A stretch of 63,240 bases of DNA, counting the filler, from Octopus bimaculoides (lineage: Eukaryota), in NCBI RefSeq assembly GCF_001194135.2. It is 7 parts of 7 records of this genome, joined end to end, with 100 filler letters (N's around TTAATTAATTAA, not from the genome) between each part and the next. Parts side by side here need not be neighbours in the genome. Positions count along the whole stretch, not along the records: positions 1 to 9,393 come from NC_068982.1; 6 more parts are not named here. One strand, written 5' to 3'. The translations under genes were made by a program, and so were the position numbers. Shown in pieces: positions 221 to 9,392 of the stretch. Position 1 is the stretch's first letter. Each line of letters starts with the position of its first letter. The notes beneath the pieces are model-generated. The model saw only the letters and a program-made list of their open reading frames with translations. It was not told where the DNA came from and ran no database searches.

Positions 221-424
221 AGACGGCGAACTGGCAGAAACGTTAGCACACCAGGCATTGCGGCATTTCGTCGTCTTTACCTTCAAATTTCGCCGAAGTC
301 GGCTTCGTCTTTTATCCTTCCGAGATCGATAAAATAGGTACCAGTGATTGACTGGAGTCAATGTAATCGACTAGCCCCTTTCCCCGAAATTGCTGGCTTT
401 GTGTCAAAATTTGAAACCAATATT
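221..424 (+). mobile_element. tRNA-derived SINE, family A (central GTCGACTTTGCCTTTCATCCTTTCGGGGTCGATAAA-type domain), diverged copy
   Basis: Head GGCGAACTGGCAGAAACGTTAGCAC, central domain and AAATTTGAAACCAATATT tail align by eye to copies at 7912, 8715, 15975 and 42820. Confidence 0.8.
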
Positions 425-844
425 AAACAAACAAGTAAGTTGATTTGCAATTTTCTTGACCATGCAAGAATAAAAACAAAGTTTACCTTTGCGGGTCTAT
501 CCGATTTTATAACAATTCTGCTAATCGTTCGCCAAAGATAGATAAATAGAAACAGACAGATAGACGGGTGAGAAAAAGATGAGGGTGAAACATATTTACG
601 TATATGCCTGTCATATATGTGCATGTGTATATTGCATAACAGGTTATAAAGCATTAACAGTCGCTTGTGCATTTGAATTAAACATGTAACATGATTTCTG
701 CTCTTCTGCGTAAATTTTATTGTGAAAGAATCTATGTTCCAAAACATATGCCTCTATGATACAATTTTATACTGAAAAAAACAGAAGCCAACTTTTTTGT
801 TCATTCCTTTTTTTACCGTTTAGTCGTAGTGGGGAGTGCAGCAC

Positions 845-982: not shown

Positions 983-1633
983 CAGCAGAGACTACAACAT
1001 TTTTAGTTTCTCATTCGGTGAAAGCTTTGGCTTTCAAAATCCGTTAAATGGTTGTTGCACCATGAGTTTGTTTTTCAGTTCACCTAGTTATTTGTATATT
1101 GTCATCTTATAATATTCGTTCAACAATATAGAGATTGGAGTTAAATGGTAACCTTGTGGTGTTTAGCAGTTCGGGAAAGAACTGCAGGAATATAGTATTT
1201 ATCTGTAACAGCTGAGATTTGTGAAACTTTGAACTCTTTAGCATTCAGGTTATTCTGTCGAATGTAATGCTTATTTATTTACATTATTTTGAATTAATCC
1301 CGCACGATCTTGTAGCCTCAAGATGATAATGTGATTGTTTATTTTTAGAATGACATTGTAGAATAGGTATGAAAGGCTGGATATAGCCTGTTTGAACGTA
1401 AAACAGGGTGAATATTTTGGCATGATAGGAGTTGCCAAACCAGTGGTTCGTAACCCCCACTTTTTTTTGTAGCGCCCCTTTCTTTTAAGTAGTTGTTATG
1501 TCTAGTGCCCACCTAAGTTGCGAGTGAAGTATCACGACTAAACTAACTTAACGTGGGTGATAATTCATAAATTTTGCTCTAAAAATGGATTTATAAGCTT
1601 TTTATAGTGAAATGATAAATTAATAAGGACAAA

Positions 1634-1868
1634 TACTCTTTTACTTGTTTCAGTCATTTGACTGCGGCCATGCTGGAGCACCGCCTTTAGTCGAGCAAAT
1701 CGACCACAGGACTTATTCTTTGTAAGCCTAGTACTTATTCTATCGGTCTCTTTTGCCGAACCGCTAAGTTACGGGGACGTAAACACACCAGCATCGGTTG
1801 TCAAGCGATGTTGGGGCGACAAACATAGATACACAAACATATACACGCACATACATACATACATACGA
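1634..1868 (-). mobile_element. SINE family B (CORE-like SINE with internal microsatellite), 3' half only
   Basis: Reverse complement of the 3' half of the full copy at 44947-45360; ends 4 nt (CGAC) past the internal (CATA)n. Confidence 0.85.
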
Positions 1869-1883
1869 CTTCATAAAAAAATC

Positions 1884-2819
1884 ATGAGGAAGTGCAACAG
1901 CACTGACATGGGCGATATTATAAAGTTTTGCAAAAACACGCCTAAGCTGATTTACCAAAACACGTGGAGCAACATCTACAGAAACACACCAAACATAAAC
2001 ACAATCATTTCAGCAGCGGCAACAGAGACAAATATAGAAAGCTTAAGCACACCCATATGGAAACAAATTAGAGAAAAGAAAGCGTATTTCAGCGCCAACA
2101 CAAACAACTACCACGACATACAAACATCGCTCGATATATTCGATGAGTGATTAAATCATCACAACATCGATCCAGAAGAATTCGGGAGACAAACTTTTGA
2201 AGTTTGCCATAAAATCAACCCAAAGGTCAATGGATTACACATAACAGGGGAAAGTAACTCCGGTAAGAGCTACATATTACGTAGCATCAGAAACGGACTT
2301 ATGAACTGCGGCAGAATGAGGTGTCAGGCCAGCGATAACTTCACGTTCGGGTCGTGCATCGACAAGACCCTCATCTATACAGACGAGATGTGGTTCACGA
2401 CTAACAACGTGGAGGAGGCCAAGTGCATTCTAGAAGGCACCAACACGTACATAAACATTAAACATCAAGCCGAAAGAATCCTCAAAAGAATGCCATCGCT
2501 TTCAACATCAAATCAAGACCCATGGAGGGTCGTTATGCAAGAGGAGCAGGCTATTAAAAACAGACTCTTCAGGTTCAGAACATCGACAAGCATGCCCAAA
2601 CTTAAAGAATGGGGAAAAGTCGAACTCAATCCTCTGATGTGGCTGACAATATGGAAGCCCTACATCGAGAAATACGTAACGAACACGTATAGCAAGATTT
2701 ATTTGGAAAACAACAAACCAAAACCATCGACAAGATTCAACGCAACAGAGATCGACAGCTGGTCACCCAACAAGAAAAGAGTCATGTTCGCAGTTCAAAG
2801 AAAACTTTGGAAGAGTTAG
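1884..2819 (+). pseudogene. NS1: Endogenous parvoviral element: NS1 SF3 helicase, hamaparvovirus/brevidensovirus-like, with in-frame TGA at 2148-2150
   Basis: ORFs 1884-2150 and 2301-2819 share one frame joined by 50 open codons: E*LNHHNIDPEEF...KINPKVNGLHITGESNSGKS. Walker A at 2247-2270, Walker B LIYTDE at 2370-2387, B' EEAKCILEG..INIKH, motif C STSN at 2502-2513, then KNRLF. Motif order and spacing fit parvoviral SF3; the brevidensovirus resemblance is from recollection, not a search. Confidence 0.9.
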
Positions 2820-3072
2820 AAGATGAGCCTACAAAAAGACCTTGTGTTCTCGACCCGACACTCGAAGCACAAGCTTGCATATATCACGGGCGAATAGACG
2901 GTACCTGCTACTTCGCCGGAGACGAAAGATCTGACGACGGAGATCAAGAGTGCGACAAAGAAGAATGGAGCCCCTTGGATTGCACTACTACCGAGCTGTG
3001 ACTACAAAACCACTTCGCATACATTAGAGAAAGAGAACTGACAGGAACATTAAATAGACTTTACAATTACAG
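2693..3072 (+). pseudogene. Overlapping -1 frame of the viral insert (frameshifted NS1 C-terminus or a second viral ORF)
   Basis: Frame open from after TAG 2690-2692 to TGA 2999-3001 (acidic, Cys/His-containing CIYHGRIDGTC), then open again (LQNHFAYIRERELTGTLNRLYNY) to the gap; composition matches NS1. Confidence 0.5.
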
Positions 3073-4059
3073 NNNNNNNNNNNNNNNNNNNNNNNNNNNN
3101 NNNNNNNNNNNNNNNNNNNNNNNNNNNNNNNNNNNNNNNNNNNNNNNNNNNNNNNNNNNNNNNNNNNNNNNNNNNNNNNNNNNNNNNNNNNNNNNNNNNN
3201 NNNNNNNNNNNNNNNNNNNNNNNNNNNNNNNNNNNNNNNNNNNNNNNNNNNNNNNNNNNNNNNNNNNNNNNNNNNNNNNNNNNNNNNNNNNNNNNNNNNN
3301 NNNNNNNNNNNNNNNNNNNNNNNNNNNNNNNNNNNNNNNNNNNNNNNNNNNNNNNNNNNNNNNNNNNNTTTATAATATCTGCTGTTTTTATATATGAAGC
3401 AATAAATTCCTTTAATGAGTTCTCATTAAAGTTGAACGATACATACGACTTTGTCTTTATTGCATGCAAGCATGTCTTTCTTTTTTTCTTTTTATTACTT
3501 ATTATTTATATATATTTATATTATATATAAATATATATAAAGAAAGAGATAAATGCATGACGTCATCACTGCCATCGAAGCTGGGTAAGTTATGAGATGC
3601 GCGCACACGCGAATCGCAGGTAAGCCATAATTTATTTTTCGCTGGTGCAGGTTAGACACTTGAAAATTAGACGGGGCACCTCTAGCACCAGGGATGCGGT
3701 ACAGTCAATGGTATTCTTTTCTATTCTAAACCATCGCCTGCTCTAGCCAAAACGAGCACTGGCAAACAAACCACTGCCCTAACCCCACCTATAAGGTGCC
3801 TTATGTTTCCGGATCGGTGGCATCAGTCGAAATGGATGAAAGCTGAAACGACTTCCTATTTATATCCTAAATGTAACGTCGATAGCAGGTCGGAGAACAG
3901 TACAACATACTAACATCGATGCAATTACGTAGAAATTAGACGGGGCACCTCTTTCTCCATCGGCATCGATGGCTGTGCGGTGTTTACTGAAAACACCTCC
4001 TACGGAATTCAATTTAATTATATAGCGAGCGGAGACTTAATCTAAATAATTGCAGAAAA

Positions 4060-4195: not shown

Positions 4196-6029
4196 TATGT
4201 ATGTATGTATGTAATTTAGCTAAGCATACAAATGTTGATGTAGAACAATAACTGCATCGTTTTTGTTTTCAAGGTGCTGCCCCAGCTTGACCAGAGCCCA
4301 ATGATTGAAACATTAAAACAATAGTGTAGTCAAACTGATGACAGATTACATCTAACTATCCTCCCAATCAGTACAGTCAATATTAACTAACTTCCCCCTC
4401 AGTTTTCATCAACAATTTCACTCGCGAAATTTGGTTAAAACTGAGGTGCCACGAATTTGGATCAAAATCATAAGCGAACTTCACAACTACACAACTATTC
4501 CCTGCGCCTTGTCTGTAAGAAAGACGGCTACTACGAATTATATCGTAAGTTTGGTCAGTCAGAACAGAGCTGATGTAAGATTAATCAAGTTGAATTGAGA
4601 CGACTGGAACAAAACAGCTTGCCGTAGCTGGCACTGGTACATTTATTCTATCGATCTTGGAAGGATGAAAGTTAGAATTAACCTTCAGAATGTAGAAGAA
4701 TGAAATTAAATACTACAAGTTAATTGGTCGAGTGTTCGGCGTTTTTTTTTGTTTTGTTTTTTTACTTACTTACTTGCCGCCCCTGATTTCATAAAACATA
4801 TAATGATAATTAAAGTTCAGAGCTGAACGAGGAATCAAACTGCAGAGGCGAGGAACTCCTATGTAATCGATATGTTTGCCAACCTTGCTATGTTCAGTTA
4901 ATACAGCACGCCCTGATAACAACATACCAAACTGACAGGTATCTTTTTACTAAAGCAATATCATATAAAGTCTTTTCGTCTTCTTTCTGATTACAGCCAC
5001 TGTTTTGTTGGCAAACAACACTTTACAACCAGAAATTCATTTGTCACGAAGAGATACCAGGGCATTTTCTATCAAGTGGTGGCGATGGTGATGATCATGA
5101 TGGCGACGACGACTATGACGATTATGATTACAACTACGTCGACGACGACGACGAAAACGAGACTTGAATGCCATTGTTTTGCTGCAATTAATTCTCCTCA
5201 ACTTGCCACAGCTCCCAACTTCATTCATACAACCTACACGTTACTAAAAGATTAGCTTCTACCACTAAAAATCGGGAGATGTCGTTATCAATCCAGTGCA
5301 TGGTATAGTGTAACGTTTACATCACTGACAGCGACAAATGATCAATACGATTTATATTTTTCTCATACTCCACTACTAATACTAATGTTTCTAGCAATAT
5401 TATTATAATTTACAGTCACCATTTTCCTGAGTTAGAAACTGGAGATCTTATATTTCAAAAGAAACAAATATCTATTATGAATAATTGAGTTGCCTAGCAT
5501 CATTACAGGTTACGGGACTTACATTTCGTGAGCTGCAAAAATCTTATTCATTTTTCTCTTCAGTGTTTTCAACCCGAGTGATATAAGCAACATTGATAAA
5601 ATAAACATTATTATACATTGTAGCCGTAAGGCCTATCTCCTCTAGGGTTTCATCATCTCAATAGCAGCAGCAGCATGGCGTGTCAAACATACATATTTTA
5701 GAAAACGGCGGCACACTTCCTGATTGCTCTTCTGTTGGCTTAACATTTACTGTTTGCTTCGATGCCAAGAATAATGTTTATGTTGAACAACTGCAAAGAG
5801 GAATGCAGCAAGCAGCGATCGTTTTATATTTGAAATTCTTGAAGAAACACTAGAGAGTAAAACTATTTTGGATTTTTTTTATTTGTCAGGTAATTTCCTT
5901 TCTTTTATTTATCCATTTTTATTTATTTCAGGGAAGCAGTTCGCTTTTGATCCTAACAACTGGTTAATTAAATTATATTGTTTTTATAGGTTTAGTATTT
6001 AGTTGAAGTTTTAATTTAAGATTGCAACT

Positions 6030-6168
6030 AATTTCGCCGAGGTCGGCTTTGCTTTTCACCTTTTCGGGGTCGTTCAAATGAGTACCAGTTGAACACTGGG
6101 GCCGATGTAATCGACTTACCACCTCTCCCTAAATTGCTGGCATTGTACCAAAATTTGAAATCAATTTA
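6030..6168 (+). mobile_element. SINE family A, 5'-truncated
   Basis: AATTTCGCCGAGGTCGGCTTTGCTTTTCACCTTTTCGGGGTCG...GTACCAGTT...AAATTTGAAATCAAT. Confidence 0.75.
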
Positions 6169-6412
6169 AGGTGGCAGCTCGTTATGTTGACGGTATTTCT
6201 AAAGATCAACTGTTAGCTAGCTTGCAATATTGAGTTCAAGTTCTCCTATAGGTCTGAAGGAGAACTTATGCCCTCCAATGTATTCCTTCTTTAGAATATT
6301 CTCTGTGTTTCAACTAATAAGATGAGCAAGGACAGTGTGGATAGATTGTCATCGGTGCTGTTCGGTGGAAAGATTGTCATCGGTGCCATACACTTAGTGA
6401 TTTGGTTCTTCT

Positions 6413-6706: not shown

Positions 6707-7393
6707 CAGGCATACCTCACCCTACGTCATTAATTGGTTCCAGGAAACACGACTTGAATCGAATTTACTCGTCTCTAGGCTAAACCTATTGTTGACAGTG
6801 TTCTTTATCCCCGGGGCTTAAGGTTTGGTATGTGCTAAAATCTTGTCCTTATTATGTACAATCGTCGATACAGTTGTCCGACTCATTCCAAAAGATCGTG
6901 CAATTGCTACCACTTTTCCACCTTTTTCATATCGTTTTATCATAGCCAGTTTATCTTCCAGCGTTATAGCATCACACTTAGCACTTTCACTATGAATTTT
7001 CTTAGGAGTCATGGGAGTAAAAAATAAAGTCACAAATGAATGAGAAAATAGCCGATAAACAGACGTAAACAAATCTGAATTCAAAACAATCGCGGAATCA
7101 CGACTGACAACGACGCCTAACGGTAGATATTGGAACTACAGTGCAAGATGAGCTCCGAAAGACCGATAAATAAGACAACACAGCTGGTTTCATGATTTCG
7201 ATTGTACAGTAACATGATTTTATGTGCTTTTAACGGTTTTCTAGTGATATTTCTGCCAATATTTGTGGCAGACGTACATAAAATCGAGTAAAATGACTTC
7301 ACTTAATTGTGATTTTTCCATATATTATTTTTGAAAACTGACGTACAATCGAGAACAACTTAAATCGAAACGACTTAAGCCGAGGTATGCCTG
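6707..7393 (-). mobile_element. Tigger/pogo-like non-autonomous DNA transposon with N-terminal CENP-B-type HTH remnant
   Basis: TIRs CAGGCATACCTC / GAGGTATGCCTG, TA at 6705-6706 and 7394-7395; ORF 6818-7084 MTPKK...ITLEDKLAMIKRYEKGGKVVAIARSFGMSRTTVSTIVHNKDKI. Confidence 0.9.
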
Positions 7394-7656: not shown

Positions 7657-7795
7657 TATAGGATTGATGTTACTCCTCCAGAAATGAAAGAAACAATAAA
7701 GAAGAGTGCGACTGTCGAAATATTGTTCATTTGATAACAGTCGTATTCTTCTTTATTGTTTCTTTAATTTCTGGAGGAGTAACATCAATCCTATA
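7657..7795. repeat. Inverted repeat, 49-bp arms with 1 mismatch, 41-nt loop
   Basis: Arms 7657-7705 and 7747-7795. Confidence 0.9.
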
Positions 7796-7911
7796 AATAT
7801 TACCAAAATGAAGTAGCTTGACAAGTTTATTTTTGAACCTGTGGAAGACACACTAGATGTCGAAATATTGTTCATTTGATAACAGTTGCACTCCAATAAT
7901 AATAATAGTAA

Positions 7912-8130
7912 TAATCCTTTTCTACTTGAGGCACAAGGCTCGAGATTTTGGGGGAGGGGGCCAGTCGATTAGATCAACTCCAGTACGCATCTGGTACTTA
8001 ATTTATCGACCCCGAAAGGATGAAAGGCAAAGTCGACCTCGGTGGAATTTGAACTTACAATGTAGCGACGGACGAAATGCCGCTAAGCATTTTGCCCGGT
8101 GTGCTAACGATTCTGCCAGCTCGTCCCCTT
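7912..8130 (-). mobile_element. SINE family A, full length
   Basis: Reverse complement head AAGGGGACGAGCTGGCAGAATCGTTAGCAC, central domain and tail present. Confidence 0.85.
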
Positions 8131-8149
8131 AATAATAATAATTGCCCTG

Positions 8150-8712
8150 ATGTAACACCAGGCAGTGGCTCTCATGGCTTTTGATTTTAACTGATTGGAA
8201 GTGTTATCATGTACATTGTTTTGTCTTGGTATAAAAAAGATGGGCTGCAGCAAATATTTTGCTCAATACTACAGATTTGCTTGTCAGTTGCATGACCTTA
8301 AGCAATTGAGCATATCTGTTAATGGTTGATGCTATGTGCGTTTCTGATCACGAGCAGAAGTGGTGGGGGAGCATCATAGCCATGTGTTGAGATGAATTAT
8401 TTGGGGTCTGAATAATTCACCTCAGCAAACATGGGTGTTTTGTTCGTCATCCTTAAACAAACCTTATTCAAGGACCTTTTGAGCGGGATGGGATAGTCGA
8501 CCTGAAGAAAATTCTAATTGGGCCCCACCTGCAAGGTTATGCGCTGTTTATCTTGATATAAGATCACCATGTCGCGCACATATGGTTGTGATGCATGTGC
8601 CTGGTGTAACCTTATCAGATGGGTATATTGGGCTTCGTATATTTGTACCCCAGTGTCAGTTTGATGGCATGCGCTGCTCTCTCTCTCTCACTCAATAATA
8701 ATAATAATAATA
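8150..8712 (+). repeat. Probable interspersed retro-repeat 3' end with (AAT)n tail
   Basis: Non-coding block ending GATGGCATGCGCTGCTCTCTC..CACTC(AAT)n; single copy in this window, family assignment is from recollection. Confidence 0.4.
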
Positions 8713-8714
8713 AT

Positions 8715-8925
8715 AGTGGTTTCAAATTTTTCCACAAAGGCAGCAATTTTGGGGGAGGGGATGAGTCCATTACATCAACCTCAGTATTCAACTGGTACTT
8801 ATTTCATCGAAAGAATGAAACGCAAAGTCGACCTCGGCGGAATTTGTACTCAGAACGTAGAGACGGGCGAAACACCGCTAAGCATTTCGACCAGCGCGTG
8901 AACAATTCTGCCAGCTCGCCGCCTG
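8715..8925 (-). mobile_element. SINE family A, full length
   Basis: Aligns to 7912-8130. Confidence 0.85.
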
Positions 8926-9223
8926 AAGCCTAATCATCGCTGCCCAGGATCAGGCATTGAATACCAGCTCAGTGGAAAGGGATATATACCACAGAAGTGC
9001 AATGAATGTGTGGGAAGGAGGTCGAAAGTGTGACTCACATTTTTAGTGCTTGTGAAAGTCTTGCGCAGTCATGACAAAGTAGCCTAAAATCTTATGGATA
9101 TGAGATAACGGGTGCTTAGTACCAACACACACCGGAAAAGGTAATGGATGAAAAGGGGACTTTGACTTTTAGGCAGACAAGGTGTTAGAGTACCGAAGGC
9201 CAGATATAGTAACCTTTGCCTCA

Positions 9224-9392
9224 AGTAGAAAAGGATTATTACTATTATTATTATTGGAGTGCAACTGTTATCAAATGAACAATATTTCGACATCTAGTGT
9301 GTCTTCCACAGGTTCAAAAATAAACTTGTCAAGCTACTTCATTTTGGTAATATTTATAGGATTGATGTTACTCCTCCAGAAATTAAAGAAAC
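9224..9392 (-). repeat. Near-identical inverted duplicate of about 7760-7933
   Basis: About 170 bp reverse-complement identity; the ORF track gives MSKYCSFDNSCTPIIIIVIILFYLR on + (7857) and - (9293). Confidence 0.9.

What the first reader, a model, noticed from the sequence alone, without database searches (positions are those of the whole stretch)
1872..3072. Endogenous hamaparvovirus-like (brevidensovirus-type) NS1 in a cephalopod-type genome
Seen: a 312-codon frame with one internal TGA carries a complete SF3 helicase (Walker A GESNSGKS, Walker B LIYTDE, B' EEAKCILEG/INIKH, motif C STSN, NR finger). It is A/C-rich and compositionally distinct from the flanks. Established: this motif set defines parvoviral NS1. 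From memory, PKVNGLHITGESNSGKS, DNFTFGSCIDK, INIKHQAERILKRMP and LNPLMW resemble mosquito brevidensovirus NS1 more than vertebrate parvovirus or ambisense densovirus NS1. Inference: a germline fossil of a parvovirus lineage infecting cephalopods, a host group whose viruses are poorly known. The few lesions suggest a fairly recent integration.
Basis: partly seen in the sequence, partly recalled or inferred. Interest (0 to 1): 0.85.

Follow-up and report, generated by a model that had tools for sequence, protein, structure and literature searches.

The report
Parvovirus NS1 gene fossil in octopus DNA
This is a broken, half-length copy of a parvovirus replication gene embedded in octopus-type DNA. 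It is an ordinary viral fossil, but it comes from an unnamed virus lineage found across cephalopods whose complete relatives carry their two genes in reverse of the usual order.

Summary
Window 1857-3001 (+) is the 3' two-thirds of a parvoviral NS1 gene (Pfam Parvo_NS1, E=1e-20). All SF3 helicase motifs are present, and the fold model matches AAV2 Rep40/68.

It is a dead fragment:
- About 200 N-terminal codons (the nuclease domain) and the whole capsid gene are missing.
- The rest carries one in-frame stop and two frameshifts.

Its 3' untranslated region continues across the N gap to at least 3482. The left junction lies in contiguous sequence, and a flanking repeat matches Octopus bimaculoides proteins.

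At least 36 related protein clusters (44-77% identity) exist, two of them in a cuttlefish genome. Divergence between copies is concentrated at third codon positions. The copies therefore look like separate integrations of diverged viruses, not neutral duplicates.

The "brevidensovirus-type" label is not supported. The nearest named relatives are unclassified bird-gut "Parvoviridae sp." (33% identity in the helicase). IHHNV reaches 19%, and no mosquito densovirus is among the best 50 matches. The capsids of relatives do resemble the shrimp virus capsids (PmMDV, PstDV).

Unexpectedly, the three fuller cephalopod locus groups examined and three 3.4-4.2 kb virus-like contigs place the capsid gene upstream of NS1.

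Verdict: a new member of a known kind (endogenous parvoviral element), from an undescribed lineage.

The parts
1620..1856 (.). Left host flank: non-viral sequence that ends in an A/C-rich tandem repeat (TRF 1819-1865) and runs straight into the viral fragment with no assembly gap
   Evidence: No parvoviral protein similarity anywhere in 1-1856. Only a weak, low-complexity trace of the NS1 interdomain linker back to about 1816 in another frame (E=0.26-5).
1857..3001 (+). NS1 remnant, a broken gene. It lacks about the first 195-200 codons (HUH nuclease domain) and carries 1 in-frame stop and 2 frameshifts, one of them at the extreme 5' edge. It ends at the authentic stop codon.
   Evidence: Pfam Parvo_NS1 E=1.1e-20. 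tblastn against 36 relatives, best 73.5% over 302 aa. Nucleotide homology starts at 1857-1864 in all relatives. The tail is in a second frame, with its stop shared with L001.
2106..2642 (+). SF3 helicase domain with every catalytic motif present (Walker A 2247-2270, Walker B 2370-2387, B' 2412-2465, motif C 2496-2513, Arg finger 2553-2570)
   Evidence: AlphaFold model of the uninterrupted helicase stretch has pLDDT 81.9. Foldseek: AAV2 Rep40/68 E=1e-12, rmsd 2.2-2.4 A, then B19 NS1.
2843..2908 (+). C-terminal Cys/His motif of NS1 (C-x10-C-x2-H-x6-C), read in the second frame
   Evidence: The same motif is in L001, L002, P0003, P0013, P0029 and P0035. A related CxxC...SQ..H.C motif is in the nearest non-cephalopod relatives and in bivalve copies.
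3002..3072 (+). Start of the 3' untranslated region of the viral unit
   Evidence: tblastx similarity of window 2963-3070 to L001 2085-2192, which spans NS1's last codons and the sequence just after its stop.
3073..3368 (.). Assembly gap (296 N) inside the element
3369..3482 (+). 3' untranslated segment that continues the element after the gap. It holds a conserved AATAAA (3401-3406); homology to L001 ends at about 3482.
   Evidence: Aligns to L001 2411-2512 at about 71% over 102 nt (E=5e-8). AATAAA located.
3588..3615 (-). 28-nt GC-rich segment that matches L001's 3' untranslated region (2301-2328) in inverted orientation. It may be part of a terminal palindrome, so the right boundary of the element is uncertain.
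   Evidence: 89% over 28 nt, E=1e-4.
3664..3682 (+). 19-nt motif AAATTAGACGGGGCACCTC, first copy
   Evidence: Two exact copies in the window against 0 in 200 shuffles. One copy (one base different) lies 575 nt after the NS1 stop in cuttlefish locus L003, at 9271-9289.
3933..3951 (+). Same 19-nt motif, second copy

Best explanation
Window 1857 to at least 3482 is an endogenous parvoviral element. It is the right-hand part of a roughly 4.3-4.6 kb parvovirus genome: the helicase two-thirds of NS1 plus the 3' untranslated region. The fragment became fixed in the germline DNA of an octopus-type cephalopod. Shown: the gene's identity, the truncation, the lesions, the contiguous left junction with host sequence, and the existence of a multi-copy cephalopod family. 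Inferred: the fragment entered by non-homologous joining of viral DNA at a chromosome break, as is accepted for other parvoviral fossils. The left part (capsid gene and nuclease domain) was lost either at integration or by a later deletion at the A/C-rich low-complexity linker. The fragment now makes no functional protein: no start codon precedes the P-loop in an open frame. Any present-day activity could only be at the RNA level, for example as a small-RNA source, and that is untested. The source virus belonged to a deep, unnamed parvovirus lineage that integrated repeatedly in cephalopods.
For: Identity: Pfam Parvo_NS1 E=1.1e-20; AAV Rep40/68 and B19 NS1 by sequence and by fold; all 50 listed BFVD matches that carry a name are parvovirus-type replication proteins. 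Endogenous and dead: homology begins at 1857-1864 in every relative; no capsid or nuclease-domain similarity anywhere else in the window; one stop and two frameshifts. Host context: the left junction has no gap; flanks hold four copies of a repeat whose ORF matches Octopus bimaculoides proteins and a CENP-B_N/pogo-type remnant. Right end: order and orientation are kept across the N gap relative to L001. Family: 36 protein clusters at 44-77% identity, two in the Acanthosepion pharaonis genome; some contigs recur in 2-8 sequencing runs; monophyletic in 100/100 bootstraps. Separate integrations: identity between window and L001 at codon positions 1/2/3 is 0.83/0.86/0.47, dN is 0.17 and synonymous sites are saturated. 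Complete units in relatives hold an HUH-type N-terminal domain and a capsid gene of PmMDV/PstDV type.
Against: No reads were available, so a chimeric assembly cannot be ruled out, and a 296-N gap lies inside the element. No orthologous or empty site was found, so fixation and age are unknown. The right boundary is uncertain, somewhere between 3482 and about 3951. All helicase motifs are intact and lesions in the retained part are few, so a young age or some retained use cannot be excluded. The host species is inferred only from a repeat family and from relatives.
Confidence: 0.87

Rival explanations
1. Contamination or misassembly: the NS1 piece comes from an exogenous virus in the sequenced tissue and was joined to octopus sequence by the assembler.
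For: An N gap lies inside the element. Nearly intact relatives exist as roughly 4 kb contigs. The helicase motifs are intact.
Against: The copy lacks about 60% of the genome unit and carries a stop and two frameshifts, which is unlike a replicating virus. The left junction is in uninterrupted sequence. Related copies sit inside 0.85 and 1.5 Mb cuttlefish contigs.
Confidence: 0.05
2. A co-opted (domesticated) host gene: the helicase part is kept and expressed by the octopus, for example as an antiviral or DNA-handling factor.
For: All catalytic motifs are present. Divergence among family members is mostly synonymous. An intact 514-aa ORF exists in a relative.
Against: In the window, an in-frame stop precedes the P-loop and the next in-frame start codon lies after it. 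The tail is frameshifted. The synonymous-biased divergence is equally expected from viruses that diverged before integrating. No ortholog under constraint was found.
Confidence: 0.04
3. A viral fossil that works at the RNA level: it lies in a repeat-rich region, is transcribed, and feeds piRNA-type small RNAs against related viruses, as proposed for parvo-like integrations in starfish and anemone (PMC6085071).
For: The surroundings are full of transposon remnants. A precedent in other marine invertebrates was read.
Against: Nothing here measures transcription or small RNAs. This is a possibility, not a finding. It is also an add-on to the best explanation rather than an alternative to it.
Confidence: 0.15
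4. A retro-copy of a subgenomic helicase-only viral mRNA (a Rep40/52-like transcript), inserted by host LINE machinery. This would explain why this copy and the L017-L020 copies all start near the nuclease-helicase linker.
For: Two independent copy types (the window, and L017-L020) begin at residues about 195-218 of NS1. A conserved AATAAA lies near the right end.
Against: There is no poly(A) tail. Homology to L001 runs about 75 nt past AATAAA and then ends in T/TA-rich sequence in the window and in (AC)n in L001. No target-site duplication was seen.
Confidence: 0.04

Closest known systems
IHHNV-derived and other parvoviral endogenous elements in marine invertebrate genomes (shrimp: PMC12287923, PMC8982415; broad survey: PMC5013282)
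   Same: Fragmentary, multi-copy germline integrations of NS1 and capsid sequence from small, PLA2-less invertebrate parvoviruses. They carry stops and frameshifts and sit among host repeats.
   Different: The host class is Cephalopoda. NS1 is only about 19% identical to IHHNV in the helicase core. Fuller relatives have the capsid gene before NS1.
Unclassified 'Parvoviridae sp.' NS proteins from bird-gut viromes (Turdus hortulorum, Motacilla cinerea, Turdus pallidus)
   Same: These are the best named matches: 33% and 30% identity with TM 0.73-0.74 on the helicase. The profile search also finds them (P0054, P0062).
   Different: Identity is far below the genus level and they are not the resolved sister group. 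Their true hosts are unknown. Their gene order was not examined here.
AAV2 Rep40/Rep68 and B19 NS1 helicases (PDB 1s9h, 9bu7, 9rm5, 9kbh)
   Same: Same SF3 fold and motif order: rmsd 2.2-2.4 A over about 175 residues, 24% identity.
   Different: These are vertebrate Parvovirinae. They have no C-terminal Cys/His motif, and NS/Rep lies upstream of the capsid gene.
Capsids of Penaeus monodon metallodensovirus (6wh3) and Penaeus stylirostris densovirus/IHHNV (3n7x)
   Same: The capsid-gene profile of the relatives (not present in the window) matches them at E=1.7e-8 and 1.5e-6. Pfam IHHNV_capsid scores 22-24 bits, just under its cut-off. No PLA2 family was detected.
   Different: The match covers only a stretch of about 55-75 residues. 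The cephalopod capsid alone gives no Pfam or PDB hit.
Parvovirus-related sequence already reported from Octopus bimaculoides (KOF81493; Francois et al. 2016, supplement)
   Same: Same host group, so a parvoviral sequence in an octopus genome is not new in itself.
   Different: That sequence has a different motif set (for example GNTGKS, FKKLAEG) and is not a member of the family described here. It did not appear among the relatives.

Membership tests
Parvoviridae NS1/Rep | SF3 helicase domain with Walker A, B, B', C and the arginine finger | tested here: met
Parvoviridae NS1/Rep | N-terminal HUH endonuclease domain | tested here: not met
   Absent from the window because the copy is truncated. 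An H-x-H-type motif and a matching N-terminal domain are present in relatives P0001, P0016, P0049 and P0064, so the loss is secondary.
Parvoviridae (virus family) | NS cassette together with a jelly-roll capsid gene in a 4-6 kb unit | tested here: met
   Met in relatives only: capsid plus NS1 units in L003, L004-L008, L010, L011 and L013, with capsid profile hits to 6wh3 and 3n7x. The window has no capsid gene.
Parvoviridae (virus family) | Linear ssDNA genome with terminal hairpins | tested here: inconclusive
   L003 has 40-bp and 28-bp stem palindromes after NS1. In the window the small hairpins are not better than shuffles (z = -1.6; L001 z = -2.6). The inverted 28-mer is only suggestive.
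Brevihamaparvovirus / Penbrevirinae (mosquito brevidensoviruses, IHHNV) | NS1 groups with the genus or subfamily; about 35-40% identity is the genus-level guide (PMC11357303) | tested here: not met
   No mosquito densovirus among the best 50 of 848 BFVD matches; IHHNV ranks 44th at 19%. No reference-based tree could be built, because reference sequences were not obtainable with these tools.
Brevihamaparvovirus / Penbrevirinae | Monosense genome with NS genes upstream of the capsid gene | tested here: not met
   Relatives have capsid gene then NS1 on one strand with gaps of 0-220 nt.
Brevihamaparvovirus / Penbrevirinae | Small capsid protein without a PLA2 domain, PstDV-like | tested here: met
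   In relatives only: profile hit to 3n7x at E=1.5e-6, and no PLA2 or Parvo_coat_N family found.
Hamavirinae (chapha- and ichthamaparvoviruses) | NS1 homology beyond the helicase core and monophyly with the subfamily | tested here: inconclusive
   About 30% identity, but only over about 148 core residues. No named member lies among the nearest sequences.
Endogenous viral element | Physically joined to host sequence | tested here: met
   The left junction is contiguous. On the right, sequence is contiguous from 3369 into octopus-type repeats. Read-level support is not testable here.
Endogenous viral element | Disabling lesions or truncation | tested here: met
   5' truncation, 1 stop and 2 frameshifts.
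Endogenous viral element | Fixed in the germline: orthologous copy or empty site in related species | not testable with these tools
   No cephalopod genome collection can be searched by DNA. No protein above 77% identity was found, and the window's own ORF is not on record.

The most novel reading that the evidence does not exclude
The fragment is a fossil of an undescribed parvovirus lineage associated with molluscs, and possibly still circulating. In this lineage the capsid gene lies upstream of NS1 on the same strand, the reverse of the order stated for all parvoviruses, and NS1 ends in a Cys/His zinc-knuckle-like motif. The lineage has entered cephalopod germlines many times. If so, it would merit at least a new genus and perhaps a new subfamily, and it would give cephalopods their first parvovirus lineage.
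Probability: 0.5. Interest if true: 0.72.

Novelty: new member of a known kind. Interest (0 to 1): 0.5.

Why it matters
Little is known about cephalopod viruses. A multi-copy family of parvoviral fossils in both octopus-type and cuttlefish genomes shows long-standing exposure of coleoid cephalopods to a distinct parvovirus lineage.

The fossils and the roughly 4 kb virus-like contigs together point to a clade with the capsid gene before NS1. That departs from the textbook layout, in which NS is on the left and VP on the right (PMC11357303). It would bear on how parvovirus expression strategies and taxonomy are defined.

The window's own copy is an ordinary dead fragment. It is useful mainly as a dated marker, once orthologous sites can be compared.

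Tried and rejected
- **Naming the nearest viruses.** Alignment queries to the search for homologous proteins timed out twice. A single-protein query with P0049 returned six unnamed proteins. Thirty cluster look-ups gave only four names: two bird-gut 'parvoviridae sp.' and two bivalve genome proteins. IMG/VR scans found no relative. A subfamily-level tree with ICTV references could therefore not be built.
- **Helicase tree.** The neighbour-joining tree of unnamed hits does not resolve a sister group. The VP-first clade was the exact sister in only 2 of 100 bootstraps.
- **First structure model.** The full-length model of P0001 was poor (pLDDT 56). Its fold matches were replaced by those of a good helicase-only model.
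- **Literature.** No paper on cephalopod parvoviral elements turned up, and none on a reversed cassette order. The search for the run accession was a false lead.
- **Repeat insertion splitting a longer copy.** Rejected: no remainder of the capsid gene or nuclease domain lies upstream, even at E up to 20.
- **Retro-copy of a subgenomic mRNA.** Rejected for lack of a poly(A) tail.
- **Tandem or circular integration as the cause of the capsid-then-NS1 adjacency.** Rejected: the intergenic gap is 0-220 nt, NS1 is never followed by a capsid gene (8 kb examined in L003), and three free roughly 4 kb contigs show the same order.
- **Terminal hairpin in the window.** The fold energies are not significant.
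- **Other negatives.** The 13-nt identity between 1859-1871 and 3439-3451 is probably chance. Rfam and tRNA scans of the window found nothing.

Full report
**1. The observation**

The frame that starts at 1872 reads as the first-stage reader described. The Walker A, Walker B, B', C and arginine-finger motifs lie at 2247-2570. They line up with the corresponding motifs of AAV2 Rep40 in a pairwise alignment. Pfam places the translation in Parvo_NS1 at E=1.1e-20, well above the curated cut-off. Papillomavirus E1 helicase is a distant second. Over 1857-3001 this frame has 3 stops against 12-28 in the other five frames. The stretch is A-rich: 0.38 against 0.31 in the flanks, with AT skew up to +0.42. 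The same bias is seen in relatives.

**2. What the piece is**

A search of 5.8 billion proteins found 36 clusters at 44-77% identity. All are from short run assemblies except two from the cuttlefish Acanthosepion pharaonis genome. The closest relative, P0001, is an intact 514-residue ORF. Its first 200 residues form an N-terminal domain with an H-x-H-type motif.

The window copy starts only at about residue 195-200 of that protein. Nucleotide homology to every relative begins at 1857-1864. Only a weak, low-complexity trace of the interdomain linker reaches back to about 1816 in another frame. Upstream lies non-viral sequence that ends in an A/C-rich tandem repeat. No nuclease-domain or capsid similarity exists anywhere else in the window.

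At the other end, the C-terminal tail of NS1 continues in a second frame. It holds a C-x10-C-x2-H-x6-C motif conserved in the family, and it ends at a stop codon shared with L001 at 2999-3001.

The gene is therefore broken in four ways:
- a 5' truncation;
- one in-frame stop;
- one frameshift near the tail;
- one further frameshift at the extreme 5' edge.

No start codon precedes the P-loop in an open frame, so no working helicase can be made.

**3. The right side**

The N run at 3073-3368 is an assembly gap inside the element. The window just before the gap matches L001 up to and just past its NS1 stop. The window at 3386-3481 matches L001 2411-2512 (about 71% over 102 nt), including a conserved AATAAA. 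Order and orientation are kept across the gap.

Beyond about 3482 the two copies diverge into different low-complexity sequence. Two further features follow:
- A 28-nt GC-rich piece of L001's untranslated region reappears inverted at 3588-3615.
- A 19-nt motif occurs twice (3664 and 3933; none in 200 shuffles). It also occurs once 575 nt after the NS1 stop in cuttlefish locus L003.

L003 carries strong palindromes in that region, with stems of 40 bp and 28 bp. The small hairpins in the window are not significant. The right boundary is therefore at least 3482 and perhaps as far as about 3951.

**4. Host and integration**

The left junction is in uninterrupted sequence. The flanks hold four copies of one repeat family. 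A repeat-derived ORF from that family matches Octopus bimaculoides proteins at 74-83%. A CENP-B_N/pogo-type remnant is also present. Relatives sit in 0.85 and 1.5 Mb cuttlefish contigs. Several relatives recur in 2-8 independent runs. These facts, together with the lesions, make an endogenous element much more likely than contamination. Read-level proof is not available here.

**5. How the copies relate**

Between the window and L001, identity at codon positions 1, 2 and 3 is 0.83, 0.86 and 0.47. dN is 0.17 and synonymous sites are saturated. Other pairs behave alike. Most divergence therefore arose under coding constraint. This is the pattern expected of viruses that diverged before integrating separately, not of duplicates decaying neutrally. 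The few lesions in the retained part fit a modest time since integration, but no date can be given.

**6. Which parvoviruses?**

An exhaustive profile search found 1099 proteins at E<=0.001. After the cephalopod family come full-length NS1 proteins from 3.4-4.2 kb contigs. Of 30 clusters looked up, only four carried names: two bird-gut 'parvoviridae sp.' and two bivalve genome proteins, from Mactra antiquata and Mya arenaria.

A neighbour-joining tree of the helicase core makes the cephalopod family monophyletic (100/100) with the window next to P0001. It does not resolve the family's sister group.

A good model of an uninterrupted 222-residue stretch of the window's own helicase (pLDDT 81.9) gave these best named BFVD matches:

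| Match | Identity | Note |
|---|---|---|
| Turdus hortulorum parvoviridae sp. | 33% | rank 1 |
| Motacilla cinerea parvoviridae sp. | 30% | rank 2 |
| Chaphamaparvoviruses | about 30% | over about 148 residues only |
| Ichthamaparvoviruses | 25% | |
| IHHNV | 19% | rank 44 |

No mosquito densovirus appears in the top 50. In the PDB the order is AAV2 Rep40/68, then B19 NS1, then papillomavirus E1. The parvoviral assignment stands.

Brevi- and penstyl-type viruses now form Penbrevirinae (PMC13426907).

**7. An unexpected feature of the lineage**

In the three fuller cephalopod locus groups examined, a 444-559-residue ORF or its C-terminal end lies upstream of NS1 on the same strand, 150-220 nt away. 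These are L001, L003 in the cuttlefish genome, and L004-L009.

The same order holds in three virus-like contigs of the nearest non-cephalopod relatives, with gaps of 0-90 nt:
- L010, 3974 nt, from GCA_014845285.1;
- L011, 4187 nt;
- L013, 3401 nt.

A profile of these ORFs matches the capsids of Penaeus monodon metallodensovirus (E=1.7e-8) and PstDV/IHHNV (E=1.5e-6). Pfam IHHNV_capsid scores just below its threshold. No PLA2 family is detected. A more distant relative, L014, has the usual order of NS1 then capsid.

The short gaps leave no room for two genome ends, and NS1 is never followed by a capsid gene. Concatemeric or circular artefacts are therefore unlikely. A review states that all parvoviruses carry NS on the left and VP on the right (PMC11357303). 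I found no paper describing the reverse order, but the library is not exhaustive.

A C-terminal Cys/His motif links the cephalopod family, this clade and the bivalve copies.

**8. What is already known**

Parvovirus-related sequences in invertebrate genomes are common. One from Octopus bimaculoides was listed in 2016 (PMC5013282 supplement), but it has a different motif set and is not part of this family. I found no description of this family.

**9. Verdict**

The window's feature is a genuine but ordinary dead parvoviral fragment: a new member of a known kind. The lineage it comes from is the interesting part. Interest is 0.5 overall, and higher if the reversed gene order and a distinct cephalopod/mollusc parvovirus clade are confirmed.

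Noticed in passing
L001 1-1911; L003 4894-8696; L004-L009; L010 422-3853; L011 480-3801; L013 55-3315; contrast L014 114-3738: In the three fuller cephalopod locus groups and in three roughly 4 kb virus-like contigs, the capsid gene lies upstream of NS1 on the same strand with gaps of 0-220 nt. This is the reverse of the canonical parvovirus order. A more distant relative (L014) has the canonical order.
   Followed up: partly
window 2843-2908; also L001, L002, P0003, P0013, P0029, P0035, and P0050, P0053, P0079, P0088, P0178, P0188: The NS1 C-terminus carries a conserved Cys/His (zinc-knuckle-like) motif. It is shared in variant form by the cephalopod family, the nearest virus-like contigs and bivalve genome copies. 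Only 9 of 75 other full-length hits have it.
   Followed up: partly
window 3664-3682 and 3933-3951; L003 9271-9289: A 19-nt motif occurs twice in the window downstream of the fragment and once at a comparable distance after NS1 in a cuttlefish copy whose NS1 is only about 55-60% identical. It may be a cis element of the genome end, or part of a shared host repeat.
   Followed up: partly
window 7758-7938 and 9213-9392: An inverted duplication of about 180 nt, 99-100% identical, whose outer arm touches the end of the piece. It may be an assembly artefact or a very recent inverted duplication.
   Followed up: no
window 227-426, 6027-6169, 7889-8145, 8689-8940: Four copies (73-77% alike, both orientations) of one interspersed repeat. 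An ORF read through one copy matches Octopus bimaculoides 'uncharacterized proteins', so those gene models are probably repeat-derived.
   Followed up: partly
window 6818-7084 (-): An 88-codon ORF with a CENP-B_N DNA-binding domain (E=1.4e-12), a remnant of a pogo/Tigger-type transposase.
   Followed up: partly
L017-L020 (P0018 copies; NS1 homology from L017 1745): A second, independent copy type is also cut off near the nuclease-helicase linker (about residue 218) with no capsid gene upstream. The A-rich low-complexity linker may be a preferred breakpoint.
   Followed up: no
L003 8766-8807, 8974-9064, 9162-9265, 9358-9413: A series of palindromes (stems up to 40 bp) lies in the 700 nt after NS1 in the cuttlefish copy. 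They are candidates for the right-hand genome terminus. No matching inverted repeat was found on the left side.
   Followed up: partly
window 1859-1871 and 3439-3451: An identical 13-nt string lies at the left edge of the fragment and inside its 3' untranslated region. It is probably chance (E=0.036), but it could mark microhomology used in a rearrangement.
   Followed up: no
L011 380-393 / 3800-3813, plus repeats of AATTCCCTAC at 3800 and 3869: A perfect 14-nt inverted repeat lies near both ends of a virus-like contig, and the motif is repeated after NS1. It may be the inner part of terminal repeats.
   Followed up: no
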